Source of the DNA: Diadema antillarum
Taxonomy: Eukaryota
DNA: 64,000 bases
Direction: 5' to 3'
Assembly: GCF_040938485.1 (NCBI RefSeq)
Contig: NW_027271635.1
Coordinates: 1,798,001 to 1,862,000, forward strand
Shown here: positions 18,622 through 60,035 of the stretch, in pieces
Layout: every line of letters starts with the position of its first letter
Numbering within the stretch: position 1 is the stretch's first letter
Notes under the pieces: generated by a model
The model's database searches: none
What the model was told of the DNA's origin: nothing
What the model saw: only the letters and a program-made list of their open reading frames with translations
Translations under genes and position numbers: made by a program

Positions 18622-21600
18622 TTCAGCATATCACTGCGTTTAATGACGGACGGAACTTCAAAATCCGATGATCGCAGCGATTCAATATTTCTAATGTAAT
18701 GTTTGCATGTTTGGCCCCAGCAAGATGTGTGTTGTTCTGTTTCGTCTTCCTCCTCCACCTCTTCCTTTTCTTCCTCTTCTTCTCCATCTTCCTCTGTGTG
18801 TGTATGCATGTGGTGGGGGTGATTACAATGATGATGACGACGACGACAATGACGATGACGATGCTAGTGATGATTATATGTATGCATGTGTTTTGTAATT
18901 TTGTTTCAGTAAATTTAGCTATTCTCACCGATAGGGCGGCAGAGTATCGAGCGCCGGGAGTCATCAGGTGCTCTGCGGCGAACGGCGAATCGTTACGAGG
19001 CAGTTCCAAGGGGGGCTGCACACCCGGCCTCGTGTTGGGTCCATCCACTCTCCTCGAATACGGCACCAGCGAGTTTTCCTTTCCTGCATGCGTCGTCCTC
19101 CCCGGAGCGTCGGCCATCCTCAGGATGGACGTGCGGTATCTCTCCATAGGGGGATCGAGCACGGAATCGTGTTCAGAATCGTAGCGTTCCGACCCATCGA
19201 TGCTCTTGGCGAAGAACGGTCCCATCTGATCGTACCCCCGCGTCCGAGGATTGTAAGCAAAATTCTAAAACCAGAATTGGAATGAACAAAGATAGGCCTA
19301 TTAGGGAATTCACTTTGACCCCCTTGATTACATGGAATTAACAGAAGAAAGTCAAGTGAAAGAAAAGTCAAAACGCTTTACACATGTGTTTATCTGCGTA
19401 ACAATATGGTGCTGATCTTCATGTACAGAAATTCAAATCGGAATTATTACATGTATTAAATATCTTTAACGTAGGCCTACACTTGCGCACTGCGACTTCA
19501 ATACCATATCAAATTGCACTCGTGGTACGGCTTGATATTCTATACTTTGTATCTTATTCAACAATCACAGAATTGTGCAGAAACAAAATGAAAACAAAAT
19601 ACGCCGAACAGGTAATATGCCGCGGGGTGGGCCGTACCTCGTTTCCATGCATATAAATATCGTCGTCATTGTCGAGCTCCGAGTTGAGATACCCCCTCAT
19701 TCTCCTCCGGTCGAAGTCGTCGTTGAAGTGTTTTGCGTTCCGGTGACGCCTAGCAACAGTTGCCAGGTAACACAGACAGAAGGAGAACACGATAAGAAGT
19801 ACCATGATGCTCACGCCTATGGTTAGCACTGCAATCGCCCACGCCGCTGGAAAAGTAGACGGAAAAATCACGCGATTAACGTAAGGGGAAGAACGTAAAG
19901 ATGCAGAGGATAAACTGGGACAGTATGGTAACGCGAAAAAACAACAACACCTAATCTTGTTTATTGTGGAAGTAATAGTCTTTGGGGTGATATCATGTCC
20001 ACTAGACCTATTTCCGCCATCAGCCCCAAAACAACATATCGTTTTTGTCATGTATATGACTATCATGGCTGACACATTATACTAAACAGGCTAAACTTTA
20101 GCTGCAATAAGGGGTATCGAATAAAGCAAAAAAGACTTCAGGACAATTACTCCTAGGACATTAAGCCCCAGTCCTGGGACCTGTTGCACAAAAGTTGAAA
20201 TCAAACATAAGTCAGAGACTCAATCTAAGTCTCTGAATACTCAGTTCTGATTGGCTGATTCCTGACATACGATCAATTTTCTGACTTATGTTGGATTGTA
20301 TCTCTTTTATGCACCAGGGTCTTGGAGGGGTAATTGTCCGGATGCGATTATCTACTTTAATAGTCGTGAACAGAGCAGCAAAGATCGATTCGATCAAATG
20401 TCGATATTGCGCTATTCATAATCCATACAGCATGTTTTTGAACAAAACATGCATTTATAATGCTGAAAGGCCCTTTACGCGAATGGTATGCAAGGCATTG
20501 TGTTAGCCCCTGTTCGTGTTTGATTTGGGGAATGAGAAGAGGATAGATTGCTGTTTCCCCCCCCCCCCCCCCCAGAATCGTAGAATGTATAAGTATGTTA
20601 GTATTTATTATGCCCCTCTTATACTGATCATAGACACCAACATGCTGTTATTTGTTGGCTGCCCGTTTATCATTCGATAAAATACATGTCAAGTTTAGCA
20701 TATTTCTTTGTAGGCCTACATTCTGCTGAAAAAGTGAAATAATGCTTGAATTTAATTGAATTGGATTGGATTGAATTGAATTGAATTGAACTGAACTGTA
20801 TTGAACTGAAATAAGGCCAAGTGAAAAAAACCCAACATGGTTAAAATCATTAGTTTCTCGATGGATACGTCGCAAAGACAGAATGTAACCCCCATGTTAG
20901 GCTGTTTGTTGTTGTTGGGAATAGCTTTTCTATTAAATGTGTGACTTCCTCATACTTTACAACAGGGGGCGAAATGTGTATGGTTTGGAGAGTGGTGAGG
21001 GTGATTTCATAATGACATTTTCAAAGTAGTTGGGCTTACGTAATCCAGTCGGAGGGGAACTCGTTGTCGCGATGATTTCTATAGGAAATCAATGAGAAAG
21101 AAAGTAAGAGATAAAGAAAAGAGAGAGAATGTATAATATATGGTTTAAGATATTGCATGTTCCTTTCAAGCGAAGCATGAAATATGATTACGATCGGGAA
21201 ATGAGAAATGCCAAAAGCTTGTGAACATTTCTTGATAAAACGCATATACATTCTAATCTGTCTCGAACAAGCGTATGTCCTTTCTTATGATCGTTCGCAG
21301 TTATTTGAACATTGCCGTGTATTTCTCTTCTTTTTTTCAAATCTGGACTTGATTTAAAGAAGGTGATTAAATAAGCCTTTGCTCAAAATAAGCTATACTT
21401 TCTCCAATTTGTGAATTGGTAGAAGAATTCACGTTATTCTTCTGTATTTTCTTTTTTTTCTATGTTTCGGTCATTCGATGTACCTGTGCTCCTTATCTTA
21501 ATCTTTACGCTCGATTTTAAGTGAGACCTTCGCTCGACAAGCTTGCTTCTAAGTAGGTTCCATAATATTTCATTCTCAGATTCCAACTTTCATAGATCGA

Positions 21601-24600
21601 CCACTATGTTCTATATCATGGTTGCAATACTCTATTATGCCTCCTACAGTTTGTAGCTGGATATCATGTATTATTTCATTATTTCATTTTGTAATATTAC
21701 GTCTCTTAGCTGGATGTCATGTATTATCTAATTTTGTTATATTTGATGTATTTCTTTATCGAGAAATATGATAAATAAATTGAAATTGAAATTGTAATTG
21801 AAATTGAAATTGAAATTGAAATTGAAATTCAACGGCGTGTTGGCTACTGTTGGTTTTCTTGATTACATTCGTGTGCATAATGTTCGTGTTTGTGTGTGTG
21901 TGTGTGTTTGTGTTTGTGTATGTGTCTGTGTGTGCGTGCGTATGTGGGTGTGTGCGTGTTACCTTGTGTGTATAAGAAGCTGTTGATATATGGATGATGG
22001 TGCTGATATGATTAAATACGTACCTTCTCGACACACTCGACCAGGGAGAGTCGTCTCGAAGGCATCAGTGTAGCCTTCTCGGCAGGTGCACGTGAAACCT
22101 CCCGCCTCGTCCGAATCGGTACAGTCCGCCTCTGCCGCGCAGTCATTTAGTGTGGCTGTCAAGCACTCGTTTACACCTTCAACAATAGATCCGAATAGGT
22201 ACTTAATCAAGGGGCCACGAAGGGATTCATCCTTTGTCTCTCAATTTGATGGGTGTGGTTGAGATGTACCTACCACATACCTGATGTGCCATCATTGCAA
22301 GGTGCAGGGACAACTGTATACTTGTTTAAAACCAAATTCCATATTCTGTTTATTTCTAACGTCAAATGAAAGTTTTGGCGTTTCTCCACCTAGCAACGGC
22401 AAGACAATTATGATTCATATTGGTAAAATGTCGACGCAAAAAAAACCCGAAAGAACAGAGACAGCAAGGAAGTACTGAACGATGAACGAATGGTACACGG
22501 AGAGGGAGATAGATAGATAGATAGATACATACATACATACATACAGTACATATATACATAGATGACTGCGTGTCTCGCAATGTTATGATTGCAGTAGGAG
22601 CTACAAACTCCTCCTCGTATACTACTAACCTTGGACTTCAATGTCGCCGATTTCATCGGAGCGTATTCTTAGCGATGTCGCCGAGGAACTGAGTGTATCG
22701 TTGACAAAGCCCTCATCGTTGACGAGCTGATCGTAGACGTTCTCTCGCAGCGCCTGGGCGTCATCCGTAAAAGTTCCTGCGAACACCGGTTCGATGTCCG
22801 CGACCACGCTGCCCTCACTGAAGCCGACAACGTTGACCGATAAGAAGCTTCCTTCTGCGATTCGATCCCTGAACAACTCTGTTACCTGCAGGTTTGATGA
22901 TATATCATCAAATTATTGGTTAGGTTCTTTTAATCTTTCTTGCGATACACCGGTGCCCGGATGGACGATATCATTATGCTGTTTATACATAGACTATGAT
23001 ACTCTCCTATATCCAATTCAAAAGTAATGGTACAGTTTCACTTGAGGTGGGGCTTCAGGTTTTCAATATTTTGTTGATGATGATTTTTATTTTTTAGATA
23101 ATAAGAAACCTCTTATGAAACATGAAAGAACATGTAATTCTAAGAGGAATCCAAAGTTTATTTGATAGAAATTGGTTATGAAATGGCTGAGATATCCCAA
23201 ACAAAGCAATTGTGATAAAAGTAAGACCCAACTTTTAGTAGGATCGCTTTGTTTTACTTTTTGTTTATGGATATGTAAGTCATTTCCAAAACCGATTTTC
23301 ATCAATAAACTTTGAATTCCTCTTAGAATTGTATGCTCTGTAACATTTTATAAAGTGCTTTTTAACTATCTCGTAAAAATGTTAAAAGCTGAATCCTCAC
23401 CTCAATCATTACTATCATTAAATCAAATCCAGTCCTTCAACATAGAAAGTAGTGAAATATAAAATGTATCTATCTGCTGCAGACTTTGCAATTTTAGTGT
23501 CAGTGCGCCAAGGGCTGTGGAGGGGCATGACAACTGCGACATGACAGAAAGTAATGCCGATATTGTACTTACAGCGTTAGTTATTGCAGTCACTAAGTCC
23601 TGGTACTCTTGGCTTGAAGGGTCCGTGTAAGAAGAAATGAAAGTCGCCTCTACGCCGTCAATTTCTACAATCACCAACGCCATGCTAAACGTGACCGCAG
23701 CTTCATTAAATTAACAAAACAAACTAGGAAGATGAAGAGACGAAACAATGATGTTTTGGTGTGATTGTATAATGTGCGATGAGACAATTTTAACAAACCC
23801 TGGCTGATATCTGGTATGCATCTGCATGACTGTCTATTTCATTAAATAAGATAAGAAGATCAGGTTGTCTGCATGAAAATCCGTCTACAATTATTCCCCG
23901 CTATACTCCATTCATGTCAATTCGGAGAAAAAAAAACTAATAATATTTACTCGGTTTTTTTTTTTCATTTCTCCCAGAGGTTTACATAATATGAGTTCTA
24001 GATTTGCTTCGGCGTTTTCGCGAATATTTTTTGAATATCATATGAATCCACACATTCCAAAAATTCATAGAGATGCATCAAGTTTACTCCCCGTTCAATG
24101 TGACTTTCTTTCTTCTCATTTGGTAAGGTTCTCCCTTAAGTGGAGATGGGAACATTCGCCTCAAAGGTTCACTGGCATATACTGCTAAGCACGCTGTTTT
24201 TTTACACACTACGTGGGAATTCTAAAGCTGATTGATTTTGAGCTTCCTGTTACGTAGAAGAAATACTTCTGTCTGTAAAATAGGGACAGAATGAGGATAA
24301 TAATGGAATGAAACTAAAAATTAATGTGATTATAGATGTTTGAGTACCAAGATTGCTTGGTGATCCAATGCAGGTTAAATAGATCTTTCCTTCGATTTTG
24401 GAGTGTGTGATTTCATCAAGATTACCTTGCCAAAACAAAATCTTTGAAATTGTAGGGAAGCAAACACGGAGTCGACGGATTTAGACCCATTGCGAATAGC
24501 AAAGGATAAAAAATGAATTGAGTAGGGACAATACACCTCTCCTTCGAAAGAACTTAAGAGGGGAATATTGCATCTAAATATCCTATATTTTTAACCATCG

Positions 24601-27600
24601 CGTCACAATAGTTCGTCATTACTCATGATGTATGTAGTAATCTTCACCCCGGACTAGCCCTTTCAGCGAGAATGAGAAGAAAACTAAAGGAGTACTTACA
24701 GACACAGACGCCCTCATTGTTCAAGGATCTTCCGGGTCGACATTGACAGACAAACATCCCATCAGCATTCTCTTCGCAGAGCTGGGTTTCAAAGTCGCAA
24801 GCATTCCCACATTCGTCTGAAAAAAAAACGGTTACAAAATCATCGTTATTCAGATAAGAGCATTTTGTTGATTACATTGACATTAGACTCTCATGGGCTG
24901 GTAGAATTACGACCGTGTCAACACAATTTGTACAACATTTTTGTTTCGGGTTTTTTAAAGATATTTTTGAAGAAGTTAATCGTGGCTTTATGCCGGGTAA
25001 AGAGAGAGCATACAAAGTACGTTCAAGTTTTGCGTTACGAACTTCTCAACGTGGGCTGAACAGGTTATACTTACTTTACATAAATGCATATTCATGACAA
25101 TTTCCCTTTTGTTTTACCTTGACATGTATCACCGACCGGAGTCTTGCCCGGCAGACACACACAGACCGGTCCTTCCGCAGACTCTGCGCAGTATTCACCG
25201 TCATTGCAGCTCACCGTCCCGCAAGGTTCTGAAAGAAATAACGCACAGGTTTCTTTTGTTTAATTCGAGACCCCCTCTGGACCACCATCACAAAACATCA
25301 TTTACGTGGACAAATAATCAATCGCCAAAGATAAAGACAAGGTCAGCACTTGGATGAATGGGTTTCTTGTTTCCTTCTAGGTTCAAAGGGATGGTATAGT
25401 ATTGGTTGAGAAGAGGATTCAGCTTTTAGCTTTTTGCCAGAAACTTAGAAACCACTTTATGAAATGTTAAAGAGCTTACAATTCGAAGAGGAGTTCAATT
25501 TTTATTTGATAAAGATCGGTTTTGAAATGGCTGAGATATTCAAAAGCAAAGTAAAACAAAGTGATCCTGGAAAAAGGTGGGTCCCATCTTTTATTAGGAC
25601 TGCTTTGTTTGGATATCACAGCCATTTCAAAACCAATTTTCATCAAATAAAGACTGAATTCCTCTTAGAATTGCATGTTCTTTCATACTACATAAGAATT
25701 TTCTATTTATCTCACAAAAAAAGTTGGAAACCTTAAGCCCCATCTCAACCAAAACTATATTATAATCCTTTTAAAGTAGATCTTTCCTCCTCAATTTGGG
25801 ACAAAGTCAAACAGGTTCACTATAAAGAGGGTCAAAGAGTGCTTGATTCTTAATTTATCTTCAGATTAGTTTCAACACTATTACAATGCGTGGCGGTCTA
25901 ATGGATTGTGCGTTTTGCTTTGAATGTCAGTTCCATGGTTCAAGCCTTAGCATGGCATTCTTGTCAGAGATTGAGAAAGAATTTAAGATTCGCAACTCTC
26001 CATTACATCCGAAATGAGAAAAATACGTGCACATGTTTGGAAGGCTATGGGTATTGTGAAGGTTATATTAATGTGGCAAGGATGATAACAATTCTCTGTT
26101 GTAAAGGGACAAATAAATGCCATGAAGGAATGAACAGATTATATGATACCTTCGGTTGGATTGGGTTCAATGGCCTCCGTAGTCCTCCCTAAAGTTGTTT
26201 CTTGTGATTCCGTAGCCGCTTCAGTAGACTTCGATAGAGTGGTAATGGCACTGGTTCCAGCAGCCATGTCAGTTTCACTTGCTGAGACAGATGTATATGT
26301 TTCTTCAGAGCCTACTGTCGTTGCCGATTCTGGCAATGGTGATGTGCTTCTCGTGTCTATTGTAAGACCACTGGTTTCTGCTACAGTCGTGTCAGACGTT
26401 GCTGCCAAAGTTCGCGGGTCGGTTGGAGTAAACGTCTCATCTGAAAATGGTTCGGTTGACACCGTCGATGAAGTTTCGGCTACTGTTGTACCGACGTTTC
26501 CCTCGGTAACGCCGACCGTTTGTGAGGAAATTGAAGGCTCTTCTGATGCTGTAAATGCCACTGTGGTCATCATAGTCCCACTGTTTGGAGAGCCTGTGAT
26601 TGGACCAGTCTGTTCTGTTTCCGCCGAAGTAAGTGGGTCGGTTGCAGTAGACGTCCCATCTGAAAATGGTTCTGTTGACACCGTCGATGAAGTTTCGGCT
26701 ACTGTTGTACCGACGTTTCCCTCGGTACCGCCGACCGTTTGTGAGGAAATTGAAGGCTCTTCTGATGCTGTAAATGCCACTGTGGTCATCATAGTCCCAC
26801 TGTTTGGAGAGCCTGTGATTGGACCAGTCTGTTCTGTTTCCGCCGAAGTAAGTGGGTCGGTTGCAGTAGACGTCCCATCTGAAAATGGTTCGGTTGACAC
26901 CGTCGATAAGGTTTCGGCTACTGTTGTACCGACGTTTCCCTCGGTACCGCCGTCCGTTTGTGAGGAAATTGAAGGCTCTTCTGATGCTGTAAATGCCACT
27001 GTGGTCATCATAGTCCCACTGTTTGGAGAACCTGTGATTGGACCAGTCTGTTCTGTTTCCGCCGAAGTACTTGGTTCCGTTGCAGTAGACGTCTCATCTG
27101 AAACAGGTTCGGTTGATTTCGTCGTTAATGTCCTGACTACTGTTGTAACGACGTTTCCCTCAGTTCCGCTGACCGTTTGTGAGGAAATTGAAGACTGTTC
27201 TGATGCTGTAAGTATCACTGTGGTGGCAAAAGTCTCACTAGTTGGAGAACCTGTGACTAGACTAGTCCGTTCTGTTTCCGCCAAAGTACGCGGGTAGGTT
27301 GCAGTAGACAGTCCATCTGAAGGAGATTTCAATTCCGTCGCTGAAGTTCTGTCATTGACCATTGTTGTATCGACGCTTGCCTCAGTTCCGCTGACGGTTT
27401 GTAATGAAGTCAGAGACTCTTCTGATGCCGTAAGTAACGATGTGGTTCCTACAGTCTCACTGCTTGTAGAGTCTGTGATCGGATTTGTCCGATCTGTTTC
27501 CATGGTAAATATCGTTGTTAGCGAAATAACAGTCCCACTCGCTGCGGAAACTTCCAAAGTTTGTGCTTCTGAAGTGGAATCTGTCAGCTCCATCGTTGTC

Positions 27601-30469
27601 ATTAGATTAGTAAGCCCGTCCTCCGTTACTCCAGTCACACCTGTAGTGCTAACGGACTGCACAGAGGTGAACGTCCCAGCTGATCCTGTTTGCGTCTCCA
27701 CCACTTCTGTCAGACCTTCACCTGTTACAACCGTTCTCTCGGGGCCGCTGACGATTGAGGTAGCGGTGTCTGTATTCAGGTCCGTACGGAGTGACATTGT
27801 CTCTGTTACTTCCAAAGTTGCTTCCGTTGTAGTCGGTTTCCGCGAGGACGTTTCTCCGTTGAAGTCGGTACTTGCGAACGCTGCGGAGGATGTTAGCGTT
27901 TCGGTCAGGGTGAAGGTTGCGTCGGTTGTTACCATGGTTGCTGCTGTATCGGTACGACTCGAGATTGTGGAGGGCGATCCTGGTCCTGTCTCGGTGATGA
28001 CAAATGTGGCAGTCTGTGTGTAGTTAGCAGAAGTGGGATTCGTAGTGGCTGCAAATGCTGTGTAACGGAAAAGTTCGATATTGCACATGGTTTAGATCAA
28101 AGAATATTATTTCATTTGTCTGTCATTCAACATTGCTGACGTGTCCAAGTTTCCAAACTATACCTTCGAAGTCTTTGCATTTTCAACGTAACACGGTAAG
28201 TGAAACGCTGTTGTAAGTTTGACGAAATTATCGGTTGCATTTTAACAGAAATAGTAGGCCCTCCGTCTTTACAAGGCAGTTATATGAGTAAGTATCATCT
28301 ACCGGTATGCAAATTAGTTGAGTGATGGTGTCGTCAGTTAACACTTCTCCAGATTGGTCGGCCTGCACACCCGAAATCCATATCTAAACTTGAAGTAAAC
28401 GAAGAATTAAATCATTTTCATAAAACTATACTGATTTAGCAAATGAGTGTTTCTGTTAAGGACACACTCGTCACTTCTAAAGATGTGCCCCAAGCATTTT
28501 CATATTGACCGCGTGTACATACCGTACATTCATATTTGCTGGAAATAAATGTCACTGAACTTAGAACTTGAATGGAACATGGCATAGAGAAAAAAAAACT
28601 GTTTCACGCAAGTGAGTGTTCGTTCAATTTTGCAAACAATTGACGTCTTGAATGCAAGAGGGGTGAAGATATGGGTGTGATTTTATTTTTTTCAATTTGT
28701 ACAAAGGGAGACAAATTGAAGAAAATCATGCCCCAGTTGAATCTTTGTTGTAAGTTTCACTTTGTAGACACTACCACTGTGCCAGTAATATCCAATAGTT
28801 GATCACATTAAAGTGATTAGTACAAACTCACATTCTCCACACACGCGACCTGGGAGGGTGTCTGGAAAGTAATCCGTAAAACCGTCGTGGCAGGTGCAGG
28901 TGAAACCGCCCGCAACGTCCGTGTCCGTACAGTTCGCATCAGGCGAGCAGTCATTCAGTGCGTTTGCGCATTCATCGACAGCTGTAGCGTTACAAAATAT
29001 AAGAGACAGCGAGAGAGAGAACTAAAATTTGCCGCAAGTATACTTACTTACGTGCATATTCTCCAAACAGGTCAGTAGAATATTTTCTCACTTTGCATGA
29101 TACCTTAACATCATATTCGTAACTATATATTATTTCTTATTCTGGATCCTGTTGATCAGAAGAACAAGAGCATTCTCATTTTCATAGTTCGCATCGCAAA
29201 ATATACATTACAAAATCAACAATCCATAATCCAATCCAACAGAAATGAAAGACGTCTGATCCAATTTCGGTCATACAATACAGCATGTGTTAACATCGAT
29301 ACAATTCGAAACCACGAAAAAAAAACCATCTGCTGAAAATACAAAAACAGAAAAGGACCTATTATTCCTCGCATATTTCTCACGTTTGAAAACAACGGAA
29401 AGATACTGATACCTTGAACTATTACGTCATTGATATCGTCAGAGCGTATTCTGAGCGAAATCGGCGTCGCGCTTGATGTGTCGTTGGCGAAACCCGCGTT
29501 CTGCATCAACTGTTCGAAGATGAGAGTCTGGAGTGCCGTGGCGTTACCAGCAAAAGAGCCAGAGAAATCCAGTTCCACATTAACCACAACGCTTCCATCA
29601 CTGAAGCTGATGACGTTTACAGATTGAAAGTCATTTTCTCCGAGCCGCCCGGAGAAGAGCGCGGCGAGCTGAAAAGAATATAGATAATGTTTCAGAGTAA
29701 TATTGTAAGCTTGAAACACGAATATCATGAGATTGCTCTGAAAGTTTTGCCCCTGTCTATTGCAACGGTAAATTCTATTAAGTTGCATGTTATAATACAT
29801 ACGTAAAGAAAAAATATATAGAAAATGTAAAGAAAAATATTATGCTATTTACATTGGTGATGACCTACAGGAAATATCATACATTGAAATATGGGTAGAT
29901 GACGATTTTGACTCCCCCCCCCCCCCCTTCATTAAATCAACACAAAACAAAAACGTAAGTGAGACAATAATCATATTTTCTTTTTCACCGAATGATTTGT
30001 TCATAGTCTCGAGAAGACAGTAAAAATATGAAAGCAATATCTCCCTGCTGTACATACCTTAGTAAACACTCCATCGTTACGTAAAGAACATAATTCAAGA
30101 GATTAAACTTTTTTTTTGCTTTATAACCTTACAATGTCACAAATATCAGCATTGTTCTTCAATTCCGTATATGTCTACGATATCGCAGAAGAGATAAGTA
30201 GATAGACACGTGCAAGTGTTATTGGCTTCGATGGTAGTTCTTCTGTTTTTCTTTATGCATTGCCATCGTCATAGCGTCGGGTGTGTAGGTTTTACAACAT
30301 AATAACTATAATATATAATATATAATCGTTGGCGTTCCATGCCAAAGACCCGGGTTCGATTCCCGGCGGAGACCAACTTTTCAACTCTTGCACTTTTTCG
30401 AAAAGGGTGAACAGTGAGAGGAATAATGATGCCAAAGCTACGGCACCGTTTTTTACTTCCTCTCTGATA

Positions 30470-30541
<72 letters not shown>

Positions 30542-33500
30542 GGAAAGAAATACATCATAATTTCATTGTACTCACAGCATTTCTTACTGCTGTGGCAAGC
30601 TCCTGATACTGGGTTGAATTCGGATCATTATAAGCATCTGCGAAATCTGCATTTTCACCGTCAATCTCCACAATAACTACGGACACTGCGAAAGTAACTG
30701 CAGCTGTAGAAGAATCAGAGGTACTGTGTATTAGTTTTGGTATGTATGACCGGGACACTGCTGTTTCTAACATGCCTGATAGAAATGTACTGCAATGCGG
30801 ACCATTAAATCATTGAAATAAACCCTTACGCAGTTTTGGTGAAGAGATTTTATCTCCAGATATATCTAACATATATCATTTTCGAGTGTCAAATGGGTTT
30901 CTTCTTTAACATCTTCTGTCATGACATTTATCAATGCTTTAACCTGTTGAGGTCGAGTCCCAAGTATACTCGGGCAGGGGTCTATGGGAAATGCGTGTTG
31001 TAGCAAAATCAGTCCGTCCTCAACGGGCTAAAGACAATCGACTGGTTTAAGTTCATTTGCATGAGGGTAGTGATCATCTTCACTTGTATAACGTGGATGG
31101 AATCGTTAGCATGGTTAGTGTTGGTTAGTGAGAGAATAAAGCGCGATACAAAAGGCCAAAATTAAAAGTGCCGGAAAGCCATGTCATCAGATATCTTCTA
31201 TTTGTTCACCTTTATTACACATAATTAGCAAGTGAATTACTCCTCTGCTTCCAACATATCTCATCTTTTTTTTTTAATGAAACCGGCATTCACGATTCAG
31301 GAGCAGAAAAAGAAATGGAAACAATGATATCATTTTCATAAGAGGTTTCTTATTATCTCACCGAAAAAAAAAATGTTAGAAACCTGGAGTTATGTAGCAA
31401 CCAAAACTATACGATCCCTTTAAATCTATTACATTGCCATCCACGTGACCGACTCACTTATGCATTGACCAGTTACGGTGTCCCGAGTACTTCCGGGTCG
31501 ACAGGAACAGCTGTGACCTCCTTCGGCATTCTCTTCGCAGAGCTCTGTCTCGAAGTTGCATGCGTTGCCACATTCGTCTGTAGAGATGTTAAATGTTCCC
31601 GAACTTAATTACACACGTTTAACACCACCAAAGAATCAAGTGGAAGAAAGAAAATTTTGCTTCCTCTTTTTCCATCATATTCATGCTACCTTATACTGTA
31701 TAAGTTAAACGATAACAAGCAAAGGAAGTTATTGACTACATAAGTTATAAAGAATATCAATTTTACCGTCATCTATGTGTTAGAACTATATCTCCCTGTT
31801 TCGATATTGCCTGACCAATATATTTACCGTTCGCAGAGAGGAAAAAGTAAGTTACCAGTTGTCAGCTCTCGTTCTGGATTTCAATACCCAATGAAGGGAA
31901 TTCAATATGATAATTCGTAGACTTAAAGATTGTTGGTAATTTAGTGATGACACAAAAAAGTGAAATGTATTGATGATGAGATGGATACGAATAAGGTGAA
32001 ATGCAGCTTTAAAGAAAAAAATGAATGCACATTTCAAATGAAGAGGTCTGCAAAGAAACGAAGCTGCGAAAGAAGAAGGAAATGGTGGACAGTTTTCAAT
32101 CGTGTATGTCGATTCTACGTATGCCTTATGTGATTGATGGGGGTAGGGGAGCAAGCTGATGTTAGCCAGTAAAGGGTCTGGACTCTCACTCAGGAGATTC
32201 AAGACTCATATCCTGCCAAGGAGTGTACATCGTCTGACAAGCTGTTCTATACAAAATGTTTAGACCGCCAAGCTTTGTATGTATAATATGCCTATCTAAC
32301 TCGGATAGCTGATTATGAGGGAAACTGATCATGAGAGGAGCCCTCCCATTCAAAGAGCAGAGTACACACTACACAGTCGTACCTTAAGTTAAAATCGGGA
32401 CTATTGATTATTGTGGTTGCTAATTCATCGTTATTTTTTTCGTATTTCTGTCATCATAATCATCAATATCATTAGTATTTATTTTTTTATCATTATCACA
32501 TTATAATGTTATCATTATCATCTCTGTAATCATCATGTTAATATTCATTGTCATCAATACCGTTTTTATTCTAATTTTCAGTACACTGTATCATTAGCAT
32601 GATTCTTTGTATTGACAATGTCATTATCAATATAACTCTATCATTATCATTGCCATTGTTTTTGTAACTGCCTTGTGGCATTTCCTTGCTTCAGCAACAT
32701 GATGAGTGAACATGATGAGTGAGCATGATTTGCTGTTTGTAATAACAGACTGATCAATCGAGAATAACCTAACAGTCTGACAGACTGAACACATTATTAC
32801 CATTTACCAGTGCAACAGGCGGTGATGGTATGGCACTGATGATATTCAATTTATATTTGTCAGAAAATTCATTCATTCAATGTTGATGTGTTTTCAAGCT
32901 GATGGAATGAACATAATATATCATTACCTCTGCAAACGTCATCCACGAGCTCTTTGCCCGGTTGGCATACGCACACAGGCCCATTTGACGATTCTGCACA
33001 ATACTGCCCATCGGTGCAGCTACCTGTTCCGCATGGTTCTGACGCAAAAAACAACAACAACAACAACAAAAATATGTGAAGAGAGAGGGACACCATTTAA
33101 GGATGTACACACAATATTGCAAACCACTAAAAGAATGAAAATGATTCACCAAATGTGTGTGAGAGATTATGTTTTCATCTATAGGTTAACAGTCAAGGAT
33201 CATATATGGCACGGATTGATATCAAAATAAATTTATTTGTAAAGAAATTCTTTTTAATCAGTATTGCTGCGATGTGATATCTTGATTTGCCAGCATTTGA
33301 GAACATTTTGTCGATGTGGATACATCAACCCTTGTCATTTCATTCGTGGATGCATTTGGTAATTTTGTAATTCTTGGAAATATATTGGTATAATCTACAT
33401 AATAATGATTGCAATTTGATTCGACTCTATCAAATATTATTACCTTCCAGCACAGTTGGCTCCGGGGCTTCTGTAGTTCTCTTGTCTGTAATTTCGTCAA

Positions 33501-36500
33501 CTTCTGTTGTAATTCTTACAGTTCTACTCGAAGTTGTAATGTCTGTTCTTTCTCCGGACGTAATGGTGTCTGTTGTAATCCCAGTCACGCCGGATGTAGA
33601 AGCCGGGTCCAACTCGGTTTGCGTTTGCGTCACTGCAGCATCGGTGGACGTCTCTGCATCAGAGTTAGTGTAGACTGTTGTTTGGATCTCGGTTTGCCTG
33701 GGTGTTGCTGTCCCACTGGCTGTTGGTTCAGTTGACTCCGTTTCTTGCTGATTTTCTGTCTGTGTGTAAACAGCAGTGTTCGCTGTCTCCATCGTGGGGC
33801 GTTCAGTCAGTTCATTCGTCCTTGTTGATGCAGTAATGTCAGTGGCAATGACATCGGTGACTGTGTCCGTGTTTTCTGTTCTCGAAGCATCCGTTGAAGT
33901 GAACGCCGTTTCCCTTTCCGTGTACGCTTCTGAAATTTCATCCGTACCATCCCGTTCCGTGATTGTATTTACGTTATCGTCAGTCCCAACTACGTCGGTT
34001 GCTGTCACGCCCAACGTCATCTCATCTGTGTAGCCCTCTGTCTCCGTCGTCGCGTCACGGTCTGTGCCTTGGTCCGTGTAGATAGACGTCGCAGACTCCG
34101 TCTCCACATCCGTTAAAGTTGTCTGAGACGCGCTGACGTCGAGAAGGGACGTCGTTTGCCTTTCCGTGAAGACATCTGTCACTTCGTTCTCCGTCACTCC
34201 AGTGCTTGGGTCTGCCGATGAAACTGTCACTGTCTGTGTTGACAACAATGTTCTTTCAGTCGTGAAAGCGTCGACTGTGGTTATAAATGTCACCTCCGCG
34301 TAATCAGTCGTTGCGCTTTTCGTTGCAAGCATTTCGGTTTGCGTTGCGTTTGTATCCCCGTCTGTGTAAACGTTTGTCACTGCAATGGTTTCCGTTATAT
34401 CCTCATCCGTGACTTCTGTGCTGAAACGGGAAACATAGCTTGTCACAGTTTCCGTAAAGTCTGCAATGTCTGTGCTTAGCTCGTGTGTCGTTGCGGTAAC
34501 GGTATCTGCTTCTGTTTCCACCACGTCTGTTGATTCATCCGTGCCGTATCCTGTGACGGTGCTTAACACCGTTTCTGTGTTGGTGTCTGTAGAATCTCTT
34601 TCCGTTGTCTGCGTGCCAGTCTCAGTAGCTATTTCTGCCAGAGTGCTCGTGTCTGGATCGCTGACACGCTCTGTCTCTGTGATCACTGTTATTCGGTCGG
34701 ATTCTGTCATTCTTATTGTTTCGCCATCGGTGACAGCCTCACTTGGCTCGATGGAAGATGTCGCAGATACCGCAGTTGTTTTTCTGTCTGTACTGTAGAA
34801 AGAATCTGTTGAAAAGTCGGTAAAGAGCGCCGACACTTCTAATGACGTTGTCACGTCTGTAGCCAGACTTCTCTGAGTAGATTCGTCTGTCACTATTATG
34901 TCGACTTCGGTAGTTTCAAAAGCTTCTTCTGTTGAAACAGGTTCTTTTGTCAAATAGAGAGAGAAAAAAAATATATAAAGAATAGCAGCTGCAAGATACT
35001 TGCCAAATTTGCATCATATATTAAGGGATAATGCCAGCAGTTCAAGTCCAACAATACACAAATAACGAATTCATGATCAAAATAATAAAAAATATACTTT
35101 AGCCATGATAACCAGATTATACAGATATTCTTTATATAGAAAGATATCATATAGATGTTAGACATATATGACTCATTTGCCCTATAAAGTAAGTCTGTAG
35201 GTTGTGTTAGAATAAACCTCAAGGGGAACTAGATTTCATGAAAGCACTTCATTATTGTAGACAGCAGTGATATGGTGTATTACATAGTTTCTCATTCTAA
35301 TACAACGAATTACTATAGTGCAGTAGTTTTCTATGTTTAAGAACTTGAGCACAATATTTCAGCATTGAGCACCCAGCAAATGTGGATAAAGCACTTTCTA
35401 TTGTTAGTACTTGCTTCATTGTAATCATTATCATTGATAGTAGGATAATTTTTATTGTTTAATGATTAATCTTTCCGTCAATAGTCATACATTTAGCATA
35501 TTTTTGGTTTGTATTTGTTAGGCCGCTGTGTGAAGCAAAAAAAAAAAAACCCGGACAAATCAAATATTGTGATATTGCATAGGCAACTCTTCTGTGGTCT
35601 TACCTGGGCACGTGAAGGACGGATCGGACCAGCTCCCATCGTTACATTCCAGAGAGGCCTGGTCTAGAGAATTTTCACAGGTGAAAATTTGACTCCCTCC
35701 GTTCTCGAAGACACCTTCCGGCTGAGACGCAGGAGGTGAATAGCAAGGGGCTTTGGTGAGAGATATACAAAAGGGAAAGGGAGAAATATATATAGATATA
35801 TATATATTTTTTTTTACATAAAATCATTTTCAATTTTTTCCGCCAATATGAAAATAGCTATATTTTCCTTGCAGAAACTATTAACCATGGTGTCTTATAA
35901 ACACAGTTATAAAATTATTGGCCTTGCTATCTTTTAGACCTTTAGGCAATTAAAATGCTCTGAATTTGAATCTTAGTGTATTTACGCGTGGATTTTTAAT
36001 TTCTTCAATCGAAATCACCGAATAGATTGTGGCGAGGCTTTTTATTTCACTGCCAAATATATCATGGGGGAATTCATAATTTAAAATATTCTTCTAACTA
36101 ACCTGTCCAAGAGCAATTATTTGTAATGATCTTTTAAGAAATGGTGTCACTGCATGTGAAGGGTTTGTTTGCAAAAACCGATAAAAGTCCATTTTGAAGA
36201 TTTTGACGTACGATGTCAGTCACAAAGTACAAAATACCTTTTAAATGATATATTGGTCACTACATATGTAGGTATATTTTTGAAGTAATGGTCAAAAGAA
36301 GCAAAAAAAATCTTATTATTCTCTCTTATTTTTCTTGACCTTTAATCGCAAATATCTCCATTTGGCAAATATGGACTTATCGGTTTTTGCAAACAAACTC
36401 TTCATATTATTCCGTTTTGACTAATCTGCGCAATACAGTGTACCCTCTAGTGGAGGTGTTTTAGCGCCTCTTTCATGTTTTAGAAATAGTATTTGCAGCG

Positions 36501-48383: not shown

Positions 48384-48387
<4 letters not shown>

Positions 48388-48677: not shown

Positions 48678-48708
<31 letters not shown>

Positions 48709-48769
48709 TGTATATACATATATATCATGTGATATTTCAGTCAAAACTATGTATGCCTCATCCTCATTC

Positions 48770-50983: not shown

Positions 50984-51151
50984 AGGTTGTTGATTCTATT
51001 GACAAAACTTTATCAAAAAACAATAATGTCCGCTAAACGTCCCCCCCCCCCCCCCAACCCCTTACTTAAAAACACTTAAACAGTGTTCAAATTCTTGGAC
51101 TAAGTGTTAAGATTTTACCTTTGCGTTCGCCCACTGCGGATGACATTATTT

Positions 51152-53841: not shown

Positions 53842-54797
53842 ACTAGAAATGTCGCTACGGCGACTGGTATGCCTCCGCCATAATGCATGGTTCTCTTAAT
53901 AGGTCTATAGTACAATGTCTTGACAAGATGTGATGACAGTTTCACGTAATTGGCAAAATATTAAAATGACAGGTTTGTCACAAATGTGCTGAATGTTCAC
54001 TTTACTTGAACAAGGCTTAATTGGATGAATAACTAAGTTGTCAGAGTGCAGGTATTTGGGAATTCGAGGATTTTTACTTGACTTCTGACCCTTTTATAAG
54101 TTTATGCATTGAGTAATTTCAGTATTAAATGGTGAAATATTAGTATTCAAACCTGGCCTTTGACCCATGACATTTGACCTCTTGGCAAGAAATTTCTCAC
54201 AGAATATTTATTGGGTAATACATGTATATTTCAAGTTTCAAGAAAAATCATGCAGGCATTGCATAAATATGAGGTAAGTAGTCACATTTTGAGGAGTTGA
54301 CTTTGACCTTTGACCCCCTGACCTTTGATCCGTGACCCACAAATTCCCTAGATAATCACTGCCAGTCAGTACATGCATATATACTAAGTTCCACAAAGAT
54401 ACCTTGAACCATTTGCGAGATATGGAGAAACACGCACTATTTCAACATTTTGACTTGACCTTCGTCCCTTGAACTTTGACCTCATGACCCGAAACTCTCT
54501 CTGGAGAATCTTTATTCAGTAGTACATATATACACCAAGTTTCAAGAAAATACCTTGAAGCATTGCATGGATATGGGGGAAATAGTGAAATTTTGAGCAT
54601 TTGACTTTGACCTTTTGACCTTTGACCTTGAGCATGTGCACCTACAAGTTGATAGGCACAACTTCGTCCACTCATACATACATGCCAAGTTTTATTAGTA
54701 TACCTCAAACGGTTTTTTAGTTACGCTGTCCACAAAATTGATTACGGACGGAAGGACGGACGGACGGACAACCACTTCGTGGCGGAGGCATACAAAA
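53842..54797 (-). mobile_element. Helentron-associated non-autonomous element (HINE / DINE-1-like)
   Basis: Minus strand: T-run, subTIR TATGCCTCCGCCA, (GTCC)n microsatellite, TGACCT-type internal repeats, inverted subTIR TGGCGGAGGCATA, hairpin GTCGC-cgta-GCGAC, end CTAGT + T-run. Confidence 0.75.
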
Positions 54798-57233
54798 TCA
54801 TCCAAAATAACATCCAAAATTCTACCAAATTGGATTGCTTAAATTGCAGTACATGACGGTGTACAATTAAAATCAAGAGACTGTATACCTTTAACTGTCA
54901 AAAAAAAAAGCGAAGGGATAAAGAGAAATTATTGATTCAATTAAGATTTCCAAATAGGACCGCACCCAGAACTGATCCTCTGGGACTCCGTGTGTAAATA
55001 AGTGAGTGAATTATTTTTTGGTAGCAGAAGAGTTATTCAAGACTTATATCAACATAAGGAAAAACACGAACATGATTAGGTATGGTACAAATTGTGTATT
55101 CTTTCTGGATACGGTCTTTAGGAAAAGCAGTTACTGTTGAGAGAATGTTTCAGACTGAAAGTTTCATATGGTGAAAACGACAAATCGGAATCGCTATACC
55201 TGCGTGCGTACCTAGTGTCACCATGGCCTTTACGAGCACTGTCTTTACCCGAGTGTTTACGAGTGCACTCCACGAGTGAACACATCGGTCATGGCGCGCG
55301 TTTTGACAACTCATTACTTGTCCAGTGTTTTTCTATGGTGGGACCAATTCCAGGGTGTGTATACTTGTCACACATTTTCTTCCAACATGTCCAAAAGTGA
55401 TTATATTACCTACTATTTTCGACAGCTATTACAGAGAACTGTAAGAAGGACGTATGACATTGTCAATGCTCATGGAATGCTTCGCATATTTTTATTCAAT
55501 AAATCACACAAGATAGAACCATCGCAAATTCAGTACAAAATGAAGTAGTTCAATTGAGTTGTAATTTGAGAATTGACATTCATGAAGCAACCGATTTCAC
55601 TTTATCTCTCTAAAAATATATTATGTCTTTTGAATGTGAAACGTTAGAAACATATGATAAAAGCAATAAATAAATATAACATGTATCTTAGATTTGGTCT
55701 GCCTCCGAACAGACTACACTTCACTACATATAGAACGAAAGACGATGGTGACTTCTTATACTTGCTTCATATTATGAACATCTCAACAACAACAAATAGA
55801 ATATCAAGGACTACAGTAAACTCATGCTTGAGAATGTCAGGTGCAGCTGTGTAATGCTCTATATGTTTTTATTTGAACATTACTTTGAAAAATGAGTCAC
55901 ACGCTCTGCTGCCACAGCTTACCAAGTCCCAAAAGCTTGGCAGTTGCCAAAAAAAAAATGCAAAAGGCCTTTTCACCGCTGCAGCAGTGACTTAGGAGCA
56001 CAGCTCATTGGGCGTTGGCCGACTGCTGTCACTGTGCTTTGTGACTTTATGGCACGGAGCTAAGACAGCTGCTTTCTTGTTCTTCAACCTGTCATTATAA
56101 TCATCCAATCATTTCTTTATGTTACTTCTAATGCAACAGATGATCGGTCTCTGCAAATTAGCATCACATAATAAACGTAGTGAGCATGATGAGTACAAAT
56201 CGATGATTTACACTATTCAACGACTTTAAGCCGGATGTATTCATATAATGATAAACATTTTCAAATTTATGCTGATTGCTCTTCTGATGAGCTATTACCA
56301 TCCTGTTGAATCCGCCTGCACATATTCAACGCATTTCAGCAATTTGAATCTACTTTGTATGCATTAGATGATGACCCGTCGAGCAAACCTAAAGGGCATA
56401 CTCCCGGAATGCCTTTGTTAAGACATGTGTATAAGGGTATTAAAGTAATGATTGTTCAACAAACCGATCTGCGGAGGCTGTGAATGCGGTGACAAAGTCA
56501 AAGTGTCGACCACAAAACTCAGGACTGGTTATCACTTGTTCTTTTTATAAGGCACTTCTTTCAAGCTTTCTCCTACATATTTCCTTCAAAACGTACGTTC
56601 AGACGCTCAGTCTAAATCTTTTTCATATTCTAAACGAATGTATTCGCAATTAGAATTTGGCACTTTGCAGACATAATTCTCATTTTATCAATTTTTGAGA
56701 TCATAGATATTCCACAAACAAATTTTGCTACGTAAATTTTTTTTTCATCATCATCATCCTTATCATCTCCTCGAGATGGTCAACGTACATGAGATATCCA
56801 CGTAAGGTTCAGATTCAACAATTGGAAAAGAAAAAATATCATGCCGTTAAGCAATGCCTGGTCTGTTTCCACATTCGCAATGCGTCAACATGAATGTGAC
56901 TTCCTGCTGCATATTAAACATAGAGGCAAACTGCGAGAAATGCGTGTCGTAAAAGGCCCTTATAGAATGGTACATATTCCGTGACGCCTTGCCTGTAAGG
57001 AGCACAACTAAGAGGGCGGTATTGCTTCTATGCTTTTCCAGCCGGATTGCAGACACAGGCTAAAGGGAAATCAAGCTGTAGGAAACCGTTTTGTATCTCA
57101 ATGCTTTTTCAACATCGACATTTGATGTAGATTACTCTCAGTTTAACGAGAATTAAAAAGAGGTGAAACAGAAATAGGTGGGGAAACCTCAAAAAAATGG
57201 AAACTGTGACCAGAAACACCTTTTGACAACATA

Positions 57234-57482
57234 TGAAGAGTTTGTTTGCAAAAACCGATAAGTCCATTTTTGACGATTTTGAAGTACGGTCTCTGCCATA
57301 AAGTACAAAATAAAACCTTTTAACTGATATATTGGTCACTTCATATCAAGGTACATTTTTGAAGTTATGGTCAAAAGAAGAAAAAATTTTCTTATTATTC
57401 TCTTTATTTTTCTTAACCTTTAATCGCAAATATCTCCATTTGGCAAGTATGGACATATCGGTTTTTGCAAACAAACTCTTCA
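57234..57482. mobile_element. ~250-bp MITE family 1, TA-flanked copy
   Basis: TA|TGAAGAGTTTG...CAAACTCTTCA|TA. Confidence 0.85.
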
Positions 57483-57782
57483 TATATTTCACACATTCAT
57501 GTTTTGAAGTAATAATGAGGCATTCGAAAGACTTTTGTGTCTGTCGAGGAATCACAGGTTTGCATTGCATAGACAGGAATCCTAACCTACATTATTGCTT
57601 TTTTAAGCCCCCTGTTGACATGACTTTCTTGCTGTGACGCCACCAGCACTTGAGGCTTGCAGTGCTAAACGACATCATCCGGGATACTAGTATGCGCAAA
57701 GAAGCACTGTGACGTCATCACGTCGGTCCTGAGTTGGCAACGTGAATGTGATGATTTGCAAAGTCGTCCGTGCCGTCTTTCG

Positions 57783-57809
57783 TCAGTGCGAAAAGTAGTC
57801 ATTGTATTG
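57783..57809 (-). CDS. M2 tentative terminal exon QYNDYFSH*
   Basis: tttcag acceptor, phase 0; YND matches the M1 terminal exon (IYNDL); weak pyrimidine tract. Confidence 0.4.
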   Translation of the reverse strand, partial: QYNDYFSH

Positions 57810-60035
57810 CTGAAATTCCATAATCATAACGATACCAAAAAATGAAAGAATTTGTAAATTATGTGATACAATACATTTCTTTCTGGCCATCGATATTGTC
57901 TTTGATTTCAAGAGCTCATTCCTATCACAATGATTTTATCTTATGATAGTGTAAATCCGATTTAGTCGTGTTTGCCACATGCTTATTATTTATTTTGCGT
58001 TTAAACAATCCAAGCCATGATGGCTTGGATGTAATGCACTTCTGAAAGAAATGTTTCCATTTCCAAGAAGGAATACATACAAATAAGCGGTGTTAAGATT
58101 ATTTGTAAGCTGAATAATGTCTTTGTCAAAGAACCCCTACTCAAGGTCTGCTGCGAAATTGATTTACACATTTTAGTATATGGGTAAAAACATAGATGTA
58201 CCCGATAATAGAAAACTTTACCCCATTCATTCATTGCTATAACTACATCACTCAAACATAAATAATATGCAAAATATTTTAAAAGAAATGAAATCACAGA
58301 GAAGGTAAGGTCAACCACTAGCCGGACACAGTTTGACGAAAATTTATCCTTTATATTCAAATACAGTCACGAGGGCTGTAGTTGAGAGAAATAGGTGATT
58401 ACCGAGTAGGATAATTTGAATAACAGTAAAATGATTGAAAGACATCAAAAAGTTTCGAATTTTCAGATTTATGTCTCTGACGTGTAGATGGCCTCCTAAT
58501 CCTCAAAAACAGCATACAGAGAGGTATAGATCCACACCAGCGTGCTGTTAAGCCAGTGTGTTAAAGCCTACAACTTACGCCGATATTTGGTCCTATGGCG
58601 CCCCCGTTGTCTATAGAAGGACGCCCTCTTGTGAGACCACGCATTTCCGAACCGTCGACGACGCGGGCATAAAATATATCTGGCGTATAGGACGATGACT
58701 GCTGGTAGTATGGGTCGCTCTCAAAGGAGCCGTTGTCGAGCCCATGGTCGCCTGGTAGTGCCTCATTTTGTCTCAGATATGACTGTCAAATAAATTCAAA
58801 AGTGTATCATATACGATGATAACTGTGCAGATCACATTTTTTTCATAAATTTGGCAGTCTTTACATAACAACCGAAATATTGTTATACTGACAGAGGAAA
58901 TGATGTTAAACTGTTATATTTGTGAATATCTTTCACTTATTTATTCTAATAGCTTATAATGACCTGACCTGAGAAAATGAGGAAAATGTTTACAAACTTT
59001 GGTTTGTCTATTTTGAAAGTTATTATGTAAAGCTTCGTACGGTTCGCTTACACACCGCATGACAATACATCTCGTAGTTGAAATAGTAATTTCTTTTTCG
59101 GTACAGTATGATGTTTGCCCGTCATAAGGGAAAAACAAAGATACAAACATGCTTCACTCCGATTTCAAATGAATTAGATGCTGACTGACATTGCGGTTGG
59201 TCTGCTTATCTTCCAAAGTGTTAACATGCCATTATTAACATTGATCAACGAGTCGTATGGATGATATTCTATTGATATAAATTGGGCGAACTTCACACCA
59301 TTAAGGCAGATTAGGGAGAAAGAAAACGTACGGCAAGATGTTCGGGCACTCGAGGCCTCATCGCACCACCCCGGCCCATTCTCCCGAGGACGTCTCGGAG
59401 AACGCGCTGCATGCTGATCATGATGGACGTTTCGACCGGGTCAACGGAAAAGCGACGGCGTGATGTCGATTCAGACTCGTTGCCGTCATCGTCCAACTGC
59501 GCCTGCGCACGCAGTGACTCGGGTTTGGTCCAGCCTGGCTGGAAGTCCCTCTGCCTACGAGCCATCGATGACCTACTACCACTATAGCGGCTTGCCCCGC
59601 GGTCGCCGAAGGAAGAATACTCTGAGCCGTCGATGACTGGCGCGTAAAATGCTTCAGGGCCGTCGGGGGCGGACAGCCTAGGATTGCGAAGAACAGCTCG
59701 TGATGTGAAATTCTGAAAAGAAGAAAGAACACAAAGATATCTTTGGTGATAAGAAATTGAATCATGAAATGCTTGACAAGAAAATAAACAAACTGTAAAC
59801 TGTTGAAAACATTTTACATTATCTTGAATGACATACATGATTATAGTGAATGCTCCAAATCATTTGGTCGACTGTCTATGTGAAGTTAATCAAAACCTTT
59901 TCAGATATACTTTGTTGTCATCATGATGATACAAAGACAAATAAATCATTCAAATTTAATCAAATGTCTGGCGAATTGGATATCGCAGTAGTATACATTA
60001 TTATAGTAGCTGAACAATATAAATGTCCTTTATTG

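What the first reader, a model, noticed from the sequence alone, without database searches (positions are those of the whole stretch)
18929..59712. Conserved, internally repeated cytoplasmic motif F[YF]Axx[VI]DGSE in both membrane paralogues
Seen: the M1 and M2 tails are otherwise hard to align, yet both start NF...NPR and contain GPFFAKSIDGSE (M1, ~19190-19225) and GPEAFYAPVIDGSE (M2, ~59620-59660). M2 repeats the motif in the next exon as IFYARVVDGSE (~58650-58685), which suggests duplication of a motif-bearing exon. Inference: three retained copies in diverged, probably disordered tails point to a short linear docking motif for an adaptor, phosphatase or trafficking protein. I know of no named motif matching it.
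Basis: partly seen in the sequence, partly recalled or inferred. Interest (0 to 1): 0.7.

Follow-up and report, generated by a model that had tools for sequence, protein, structure and literature searches.

The report
Conserved tail motif in urchin mucins
Two neighbouring sea-urchin genes for mucin-like surface proteins carry, in otherwise fast-changing and unstructured inner tails, a ten-residue peptide kept across distant urchin orders, so it is probably a docking site for an unknown cell protein, though not one that relies on tyrosine.

Summary
The window is from Diadema antillarum. Both genes lie on the minus strand and encode Sushi/mucin/EGF/SEA/TM surface proteins. F[YF]Axx[VI]DGSE occurs exactly three times in all six frames (about 1e-5 expected), all in the two cytoplasmic tails.

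All three copies are conserved in other urchins:
- The M1 copy is present in the S. purpuratus ("mucin-17"), L. pictus and L. variegatus orthologues.
- Both M2 copies are present in the S. purpuratus gene just upstream of the M1 orthologue. The second copy is its extreme C-terminus (…FFARVIDGSE, then stop).

Across eight tail exons the only invariant columns are F, A, D, G and S of the motif. Each uses several synonymous codons, so the constraint acts on the protein. AlphaFold gives no structure around the motif.

- Tyr is Phe in five of eight copies, so phosphotyrosine readers are unlikely.
- "NF…NPR" is not conserved.
- M2 tail exon 1 ends at 59332, not 59380.
- In M1 the motif heads a conserved block of about 45 residues.
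- Both assembly gaps lie between the genes.

Best reading: an unnamed docking motif shared by three euechinoid genera; the partner is unknown. Interest is moderate.

The parts
19187..19216 (-). M1 motif copy, FFAKSIDGSE
   Evidence: Conserved as FFAKVIDGSE in S. purpuratus and FFAKVFDGSE in both Lytechinus species.
18929..19264 (-). M1 tail exon, 112 codons, phase 0/0. The motif heads a conserved block of about 45 residues (motif, then DS.LDP..ERY..S..RM).
   Evidence: Acceptor and GTGAG donor read. 100% match to the NCBI Diadema model P0001. Orthologue alignment.
17946..17990 (-). M1 last coding exon, GKGPAVIYNDLAGR then stop
   Evidence: The C-terminal peptide GP..I[YF]NDLA is conserved in S. 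purpuratus and Lytechinus.
19638..19846 (-). M1 transmembrane and juxtamembrane exon. The motif starts 54 residues after the membrane span.
   Evidence: Splice sites read; hydrophobic span.
60779..60966 (-). M2 transmembrane and juxtamembrane exon (GTGAGT donor). The first motif copy starts 54 residues after the span.
59332..59712 (-). M2 tail exon 1, 127 codons, phase 0/0. The 3' end is corrected from 59380.
   Evidence: BLASTP against the S. purpuratus exon L001:1897-2244 gives E 5e-16, and both end ...HLA before GTA.
59620..59649 (-). M2 motif copy a, FYAPVIDGSE
   Evidence: The S. purpuratus counterpart is FFARVYDGSS.
59374..59439 (-). Predicted amphipathic helix in M2 tail exon 1 (residues 92-113). 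This is the second conserved block of the M2 tail.
   Evidence: AlphaFold pLDDT about 85. Nearly identical in S. purpuratus.
58579..58782 (-). M2 tail exon 2, phase-0 acceptor TTTGACAG. The reading frame runs on to a stop at about 58561-58563. A GTAAGT after 58579 could be a donor.
   Evidence: The orthologous exon L001:2925-3089 is the last coding exon of the S. purpuratus model.
58645..58674 (-). M2 motif copy b, FYARVVDGSE
   Evidence: In S. purpuratus it reads FFARVIDGSE followed directly by the stop codon.

Best explanation
The three peptides are copies of one constrained short linear motif. Its core is F-[FY]-A-[KRP]-[VS]-hydrophobic-D-G-S-[ES], usually with a Pro two or three residues upstream.

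It lies in the largely disordered cytoplasmic tails of two anciently duplicated, tandem euechinoid genes. These genes encode SEA/EGF-type transmembrane mucin-like proteins: M1 is the orthologue of S. purpuratus 'mucin-17', and M2 is its upstream neighbour.

Shown here:
- The motif's position in the tails.
- Its conservation in orthologues and paralogues.
- Constraint at the protein level.
- A predicted disordered context.

Inferred: it works as a docking peptide for a cytosolic partner, such as a sorting, scaffolding or signalling adaptor.
- The aromatic/hydrophobic half (F-F/Y-A-x-V-hydrophobic) would supply the contact.
- The invariant Asp-Gly-Ser, often followed by an acidic, Ser-rich stretch, would supply a turn and a possible phospho-serine switch.
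- Recognition does not need tyrosine.
- The peptide can work either internally, about 54 residues from the membrane, or as the free C-terminus.
For: - Exactly three matches in 128,000 six-frame codons, all in the two tails, against 1e-5 expected.
- The M1 copy is kept in S. purpuratus, L. pictus and L. variegatus. Both M2 copies are kept in the syntenic S. purpuratus gene.
- Diadematoida and Camarodonta are different euechinoid orders.
- In the alignment of eight exons, the only invariant columns are F, A, D, G and S of the motif.
- Each invariant residue is encoded by two to four synonymous codons.
- Flanks diverge. M2 exon 2 has 17 identical columns of 82 between species, mostly at the motif.
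- AlphaFold on the M1 tail exon gives mean pLDDT 54.5 and no secondary structure, with its mildly best blocks over residues 11-30, which include the motif. The M2 motif region scores about 51.
- No Pfam family covers the tails.
- The first copy sits at the same distance from the membrane, 54 residues, in both Diadema genes.
Against:
- In M1 the motif is only the start of a conserved block of about 45 residues, and M1 and M2 align over 37 columns. The working unit may therefore be longer than ten residues.
- Conservation of the M2 copies rests on two species only.
- No RNA evidence for the Diadema exon joins could be obtained.
- No proteome-wide motif scan could be run, so its spread outside this gene pair is unknown.
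Confidence: 0.6

Rival explanations
1. The motif is not a separate unit. It is simply the best-kept stretch of a longer homologous tail module: the motif plus a downstream helix-forming segment, which fold or bind together.
For: - M1 orthologues share about 45 contiguous conserved residues starting at the motif.
- hhalign aligns M1 and M2 over 37 columns.
- M2 exon 1 has a second conserved block predicted as a confident helix.
Against: - M2 copy b stands alone. In S. purpuratus the protein ends right after DGSE.
- In M2 the motif and the helix are about 60 poorly conserved residues apart.
- Across all eight exons, only motif columns are invariant.
Confidence: 0.2
2. It is a phosphotyrosine-dependent site (ITIM-like I-x-Y-x-x-V, SH2/PTB ligand) or a YxxPhi endocytic signal.
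For: The Diadema M2 copies read FYAPV and IFYARV. These fit Y-x-x-V, and for copy b the ITIM pattern. The motif definitions come from general knowledge.
Against: The Tyr position is Phe in five of eight copies: all four M1 orthologues and both S. purpuratus M2 copies.
Confidence: 0.05
3. It is a protease site of the caspase type, cleaved after the invariant Asp before Gly-Ser. This would release or unmask part of the tail, as in dependence receptors.
For: Asp, followed by small Gly and Ser, is invariant, and a hydrophobic residue precedes the Asp. The analogy comes from general knowledge.
Against: - The position four residues before the cut is K, R or P, which is unusual for caspases.
- The invariant F and A, seven and five residues upstream, would not be needed.
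- In S. purpuratus M2 copy b, cleavage would remove only three residues.
Confidence: 0.07
4. The similarity is neutral leftover from common ancestry or recent gene conversion between neighbouring paralogues, with no function.
For: The genes are tandem paralogues.
Against: - The DNA of the copies differs at most synonymous sites, so there has been no recent conversion.
- The flanks have diverged while the motif has not, in both genes and in two orders of urchins.
Confidence: 0.03

Closest known systems
Vertebrate MUC3/MUC12/MUC17 (and MUC13) SEA-type transmembrane mucins
   Same: - The same ectodomain logic: Thr/Ser-rich mucin domain, EGF-like domains flanking a SEA domain with a G/SVV(V/A) site, one membrane span, and a short cytoplasmic tail that controls localisation (review PMC13643018).
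- NCBI names the urchin orthologues 'mucin-17' and 'mucin-3A-like'.
   Different: - The urchin proteins add N-terminal Sushi domains and a doubled mucin-EGF-EGF-SEA-EGF module.
- Their tails end in ...NDLAGR/NDLAMH or ...DGSE, not in the class I PDZ ligand that anchors MUC17 to PDZK1.
- No tail similarity to vertebrate mucins was seen. Fish MUC1-like hits carry quite different tails.
- Orthology was not tested.
MUC1 cytoplasmic tail docking motifs
   Same: Concept only: a SEA-type membrane mucin whose disordered tail carries short conserved docking peptides.
   Different: The fish MUC1-like tails recovered by the SEA profile (P0003, P0008, P0041) share no motif with M1 or M2. MUC1 signalling relies on Tyr sites, which are not conserved here.
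FFAT motif (two phenylalanines in an acidic tract; VAP ligand)
   Same: Two adjacent aromatic residues followed by Ala and acidic/Ser residues, in a disordered region.
   Different: The FFAT core is E-F-F-D-A-x-E (general knowledge). Here the residue after FF is Ala, followed by K/R/P, and the acidic residues lie downstream rather than upstream. The resemblance comes from memory and did not hold up on inspection.
EFRRPY[VI]..G[SD]E peptide in tails of other echinoderm SEA-EGF-TM proteins (Diadema P0030, Antedon P0035)
   Same: The same kind of protein, the same tail location, and an ending of two hydrophobic residues, one variable residue, then G-[SD]-E.
   Different: The profile comparison with the motif is not significant: probability 1.3%, P 0.04. 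The motif HMM does not find it. It is a lead only.

Membership tests
SEA-type transmembrane mucin (MUC3/12/17 architecture class) | Large Pro/Thr/Ser-rich mucin domain | tested here: met
   Thr/Ser-rich exons at 26142-28091 and 33433-35013.
SEA-type transmembrane mucin (MUC3/12/17 architecture class) | SEA domain with a G/SVVV-type autoproteolysis site, flanked by EGF-like domains | tested here: met
   - Pfam SEA scores 4.8e-16 on the S. purpuratus orthologue. It is weak on the single Diadema exons.
- GSVVV and GSVVA are visible.
- EGF_CA appears on exons.
Cleavage itself was not tested.
SEA-type transmembrane mucin (MUC3/12/17 architecture class) | Single membrane span followed by a cytoplasmic tail | tested here: met
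   Hydrophobic spans followed by basic stop-transfer residues in exons 19638-19846 and 60779-60966, and in the orthologues.
SEA-type transmembrane mucin (MUC3/12/17 architecture class) | Class I PDZ-binding C-terminus (S/T-x-hydrophobic), as in MUC3/12/17 | tested here: not met
   The C-termini are ...NDLAGR...NDLAMH and ...IDGSE. The definition is from PMC13643018.
SEA-type transmembrane mucin (MUC3/12/17 architecture class) | Orthology with the vertebrate genes | not tested
   No tree was built. The names 'mucin-17' and 'mucin-3A-like' are automatic annotations.
Short linear motif (docking peptide in a disordered region) | Short conserved island between diverging flanks, constrained at the protein level | tested here: met
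   The only invariant columns among eight exons, with synonymous codon variation at all five. Flank divergence.
Short linear motif (docking peptide in a disordered region) | Lies in intrinsically disordered sequence | tested here: met
   AlphaFold pLDDT is about 50-66 with no secondary structure at the motif in both tails. This is a prediction only, from shallow alignments.
Short linear motif (docking peptide in a disordered region) | A defined binding partner or modifying enzyme | not testable with these tools
   This needs pull-down, structure or complex prediction.
Phosphotyrosine / YxxPhi motifs (ITIM, SH2, PTB, AP-mu ligands) | Conserved tyrosine | tested here: not met
   Phe replaces Tyr in five of eight copies.
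FFAT motif | Core E-F-F-D-A-x-E within an acidic tract | tested here: not met
   Positions 4 and 5 are A and K/R/P, and the upstream flank is not acidic. The consensus is from general knowledge.
Caspase-type cleavage site | Asp before the cut, a small residue after it, and a suitable residue four positions upstream; cleavage releases a meaningful fragment | tested here: inconclusive
   D-G-S is invariant. The upstream position is K/R/P, and one copy lies three residues from the C-terminus.

The most novel reading that the evidence does not exclude
The peptide defines a new class of docking motif. It would couple echinoderm SEA/EGF membrane mucins to a dedicated, still unknown cytosolic adaptor. 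It would be usable both internally and as a free C-terminus. The EFRRPY[VI]..G[SD]E peptide of a crinoid and of a third Diadema paralogue could be its older form. That would make it a phylum-wide tail code replacing the PDZ ligand of vertebrate MUC3/12/17.
Probability: 0.3. Interest if true: 0.5.

Novelty: new member of a known kind. Interest (0 to 1): 0.38.

Why it matters
Membrane mucins build the glycocalyx. What is known of their cytoplasmic tails comes mostly from work on vertebrate mucins. Here an invertebrate family with the MUC3/12/17-type ectodomain lacks the vertebrate PDZ ligand and instead keeps a different short peptide, once or twice per tail, across distant urchin orders.

This gives a concrete, small and mutable handle (about 12 residues) for asking how such proteins are sorted, anchored or signal in sea-urchin embryos and adult epithelia. 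It is also a candidate new entry for motif catalogues.

The finding also shows that the Diadema annotation splits M1 into at least two models, an ectodomain and a 113-residue 'uncharacterized protein'. That split hides the tail from domain-based surveys.

Tried and rejected
- **RNA evidence.** The look-up of sequencing runs listed no RNA run for 58400-61100. Read laying could not be used, so the Diadema exon joins rest on splice signals, reading phase and orthologues.
- **Exon-wise word-index searches.** The M1 tail exon found only the Diadema 113-residue model. M2 tail exon 1 found nothing. The length window of that tool excludes full-length relatives, so these blanks mean little.
- **Use of the single HMMER library job.** I spent it on a SEA-exon profile rather than on the tail, because a 16-column motif profile scores only 27-30 bits, too little for 1.8 billion sequences. 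The full-length hits were then scanned locally.
- **M2 orthologues in Lytechinus.** None lies within 10 kb upstream of the M1 orthologue.
- **Two ENA contigs with SEA fragments.** They returned no DNA.
- **PDB profile searches.** Searches with the tail and with the motif block gave only chance hits, for example ARVVDGSEF inside propionyl-CoA carboxylase beta at E 0.65.
- **Link to the EFRRPY...GSE peptide.** Not significant.
- **Literature.** Nothing was found for the peptide strings, the S. purpuratus locus name or urchin SEA mucin tails.
- **Motif classes recalled from memory.** By inspection none fits: FFAT, LIR, clathrin box, RVxF, LxxIxE, PxIxIT, internal PDZ ligand and the cadherin beta-catenin core. 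No ELM scan was available.
- **Spliced models.** All searches were made exon by exon, by reference.
Full report
**What is in the window**

The M1 tail exon is 100% identical to an NCBI protein of Diadema antillarum, so the window comes from that sea urchin. Both genes lie on the minus strand.

M1 runs from about 43.7 kb down to 17946. In order it has:
- Sushi exons at 42023-35602.
- Two modules of Thr/Ser-rich mucin exon, two EGF exons, a split SEA domain with GSVVV or GSVVA, and a calcium-binding EGF exon.
- A transmembrane exon at 19638-19846.
- The tail exon at 18929-19264.
- A last exon at 17946-17990.

An earlier first-reader note on 17946-43754 describes the same architecture.

M2 enters from beyond 64000. 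It has a SEA exon, an EGF_CA exon, a transmembrane exon at 60779-60966 and two tail exons. The NCBI annotation splits M1 into an ectodomain model (P0002) and a 113-residue 'uncharacterized protein' (P0001).

**The observation**

A six-frame scan finds F[YF]A..[VI]DGSE only at 19187-19216, 59620-59649 and 58645-58674, and [VIL]DGSE nowhere else. The expected counts are 1e-5 and 0.08, and the strict pattern appeared in none of 100 shuffles.

The two assembly gaps lie in the space between M2 and M1, with no ORFs or homologous exons nearby. They do not bear on the finding.

**Relatives**

Word-index searches with single tail exons are limited by the tool's length window and gave almost nothing. 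I therefore used the one exhaustive HMMER job on a profile of the three SEA exons and scanned the 41 hits locally.

One hit is S. purpuratus 'mucin-17' (P0005 and its isoforms; full length is P0045 at 1734 residues). It has the same architecture as M1, including a signal peptide and Sushi domains. Its tail carries GPMFFAKVIDGSE and the same C-terminal peptide as M1.

A region search with that tail added L. pictus 'mucin-3A-like', which carries FFAKVFDGSE. The L. variegatus locus has the same tail exon.

**The M2 orthologue**

In the S. purpuratus locus L001, the gene immediately upstream of the M1 orthologue, on the same strand, ends at base 3092. It contains:
- A transmembrane exon.
- A tail exon (1897-2244) with AAFFARVYDGSS, which ends ...RVPDHLA before GTAAGT.
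- A last exon (2925-3089) that ends ...VFFARVIDGSE directly before the stop codon.

BLASTP of the Diadema exons against these gives E 5e-16 and 1e-7.

Three points follow:
- Both M2 copies and the exon that carries the second one predate the split of Diadematoida and Camarodonta.
- The exon is used as coding sequence in the S. purpuratus model.
- The true 3' end of Diadema M2 exon 1 is 59332, where a GTACGT donor lies, not 59380.

In Diadema the frame runs on for about 31 codons after copy b. A GTAAGT after 58579 might be a donor. Without RNA this stays open.

**Strength and nature of the constraint**

- In the alignment of eight tail exons (M1 from four species, M2 exons 1 and 2 from two species), the only invariant columns are F, A, D, G and S of the motif.
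- Their codons vary: TTC/TTT; GCC/GCT/GCG; GAT/GAC; GGG/GGC/GGT; TCG/TCC/TCA/TCT. Selection therefore acts on the peptide, and recent gene conversion is excluded.
- The second position is Phe in five of eight copies.
- The derived core is F-[FY]-A-[KRP]-[VS]-[IVFY]-D-G-S-[ES], with Pro two or three residues upstream in most copies and often an acidic, Ser-rich stretch after it.
- 'NF...NPR' is not kept.

**Context of the motif in the tails**

- M1 orthologues conserve about 45 residues beginning at the motif, plus the last 10 or so residues of the protein.
- M1 and M2 tails align over 37 columns (E 1.8e-5).
- M2 exon 1 has a second conserved block that AlphaFold predicts as a helix (residues 92-113, pLDDT about 85). 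The motif regions in both tails score 50-66 with no secondary structure.
- Pfam finds nothing in the tails.
- The first copy begins 54 residues after the membrane span in both Diadema genes.

**Mechanism**

Shown: a peptide-level constraint on a short island in disordered cytoplasmic tails, in one or two copies, tolerated both internally and as the free C-terminus.

Inferred: a docking site for a cytosolic partner. The aromatic/hydrophobic half would be the contact surface, and Asp-Gly-Ser would be a turn and a possible phospho-serine switch.

Tyrosine-dependent readers are unlikely. A caspase-type site is possible on paper, but it fits poorly with the invariant F and A, with the basic or Pro residue upstream, and with a copy that lies three residues from the C-terminus. 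A longer bipartite module is the main rival.

**Comparison with known systems**

The ectodomain matches the MUC3/12/17 class, but the tail lacks the class I PDZ ligand that defines the localisation of those mucins. Fish MUC1-like hits have unrelated tails.

The following gave no match:
- PDB searches.
- The motif HMM run over all fetched proteins.
- Literature searches.

A similar-looking peptide, EFRRPY[VI]..G[SD]E, occurs in a 7197-residue Diadema paralogue and in a crinoid protein. The link to the motif is not significant.

**Limits**

- No proteome-wide motif scan or ELM comparison was possible.
- M2 conservation rests on two species.

**Verdict**

It is an unnamed short motif of a known general kind, of moderate interest.

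Noticed in passing
window 4276-12894 (+ strand): A run of Sushi-domain exons on the opposite strand resembles the N-terminal Sushi part of M1 and of S. purpuratus 'mucin-17'. It may be a third, convergent relative or a partial duplicate. No tail motif lies downstream of it in the window.
   Followed up: partly
window 17946-43754 (-): The NCBI annotation of Diadema splits M1 into at least two models: a 1095-residue ectodomain (P0002) and a 113-residue 'uncharacterized protein' (P0001) that starts inside the motif-bearing tail exon. The transmembrane exon belongs to neither.
   Followed up: partly
window 17946-17990 (-); L001, L002, L003 last exons: A second conserved tail peptide sits at the M1 C-terminus, GP.[VI]I[YF]NDLA followed by two residues. 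It is kept in four urchins and its function is unknown.
   Followed up: partly
window 59374-59439 (-): A conserved amphipathic helix is predicted with confidence in M2 tail exon 1 (VDP.ETSI..S..RVL.DV). It loosely resembles the DS.LDP..ERY..S..RM block that follows the motif in M1.
   Followed up: partly
P0030 residues 7097-7125 (Diadema, elsewhere in the genome); P0035 residues 1081-1095 (Antedon): A 7197-residue Diadema SEA/EGF membrane protein and a crinoid protein share EFRRPY[VI]..G[SD]E in their tails. P0030 also has PIYYAR just upstream, which recalls IFYAR of M2 copy b. No statistical support was found for a link to the motif.
   Followed up: partly
window 29411-29668 and 22628-22885 (-): The two M1 SEA domains keep GSVVV and GSVVA, the canonical self-cleavage site. 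M2 has GSIGT, which may not cleave.
   Followed up: no
window 19638-19846 and 60779-60966 (-): Both membrane spans end in Cys-rich stretches (CLC, CCLLCLIC) next to basic residues. These are possible palmitoylation sites, as at the MUC1 CQC.
   Followed up: no
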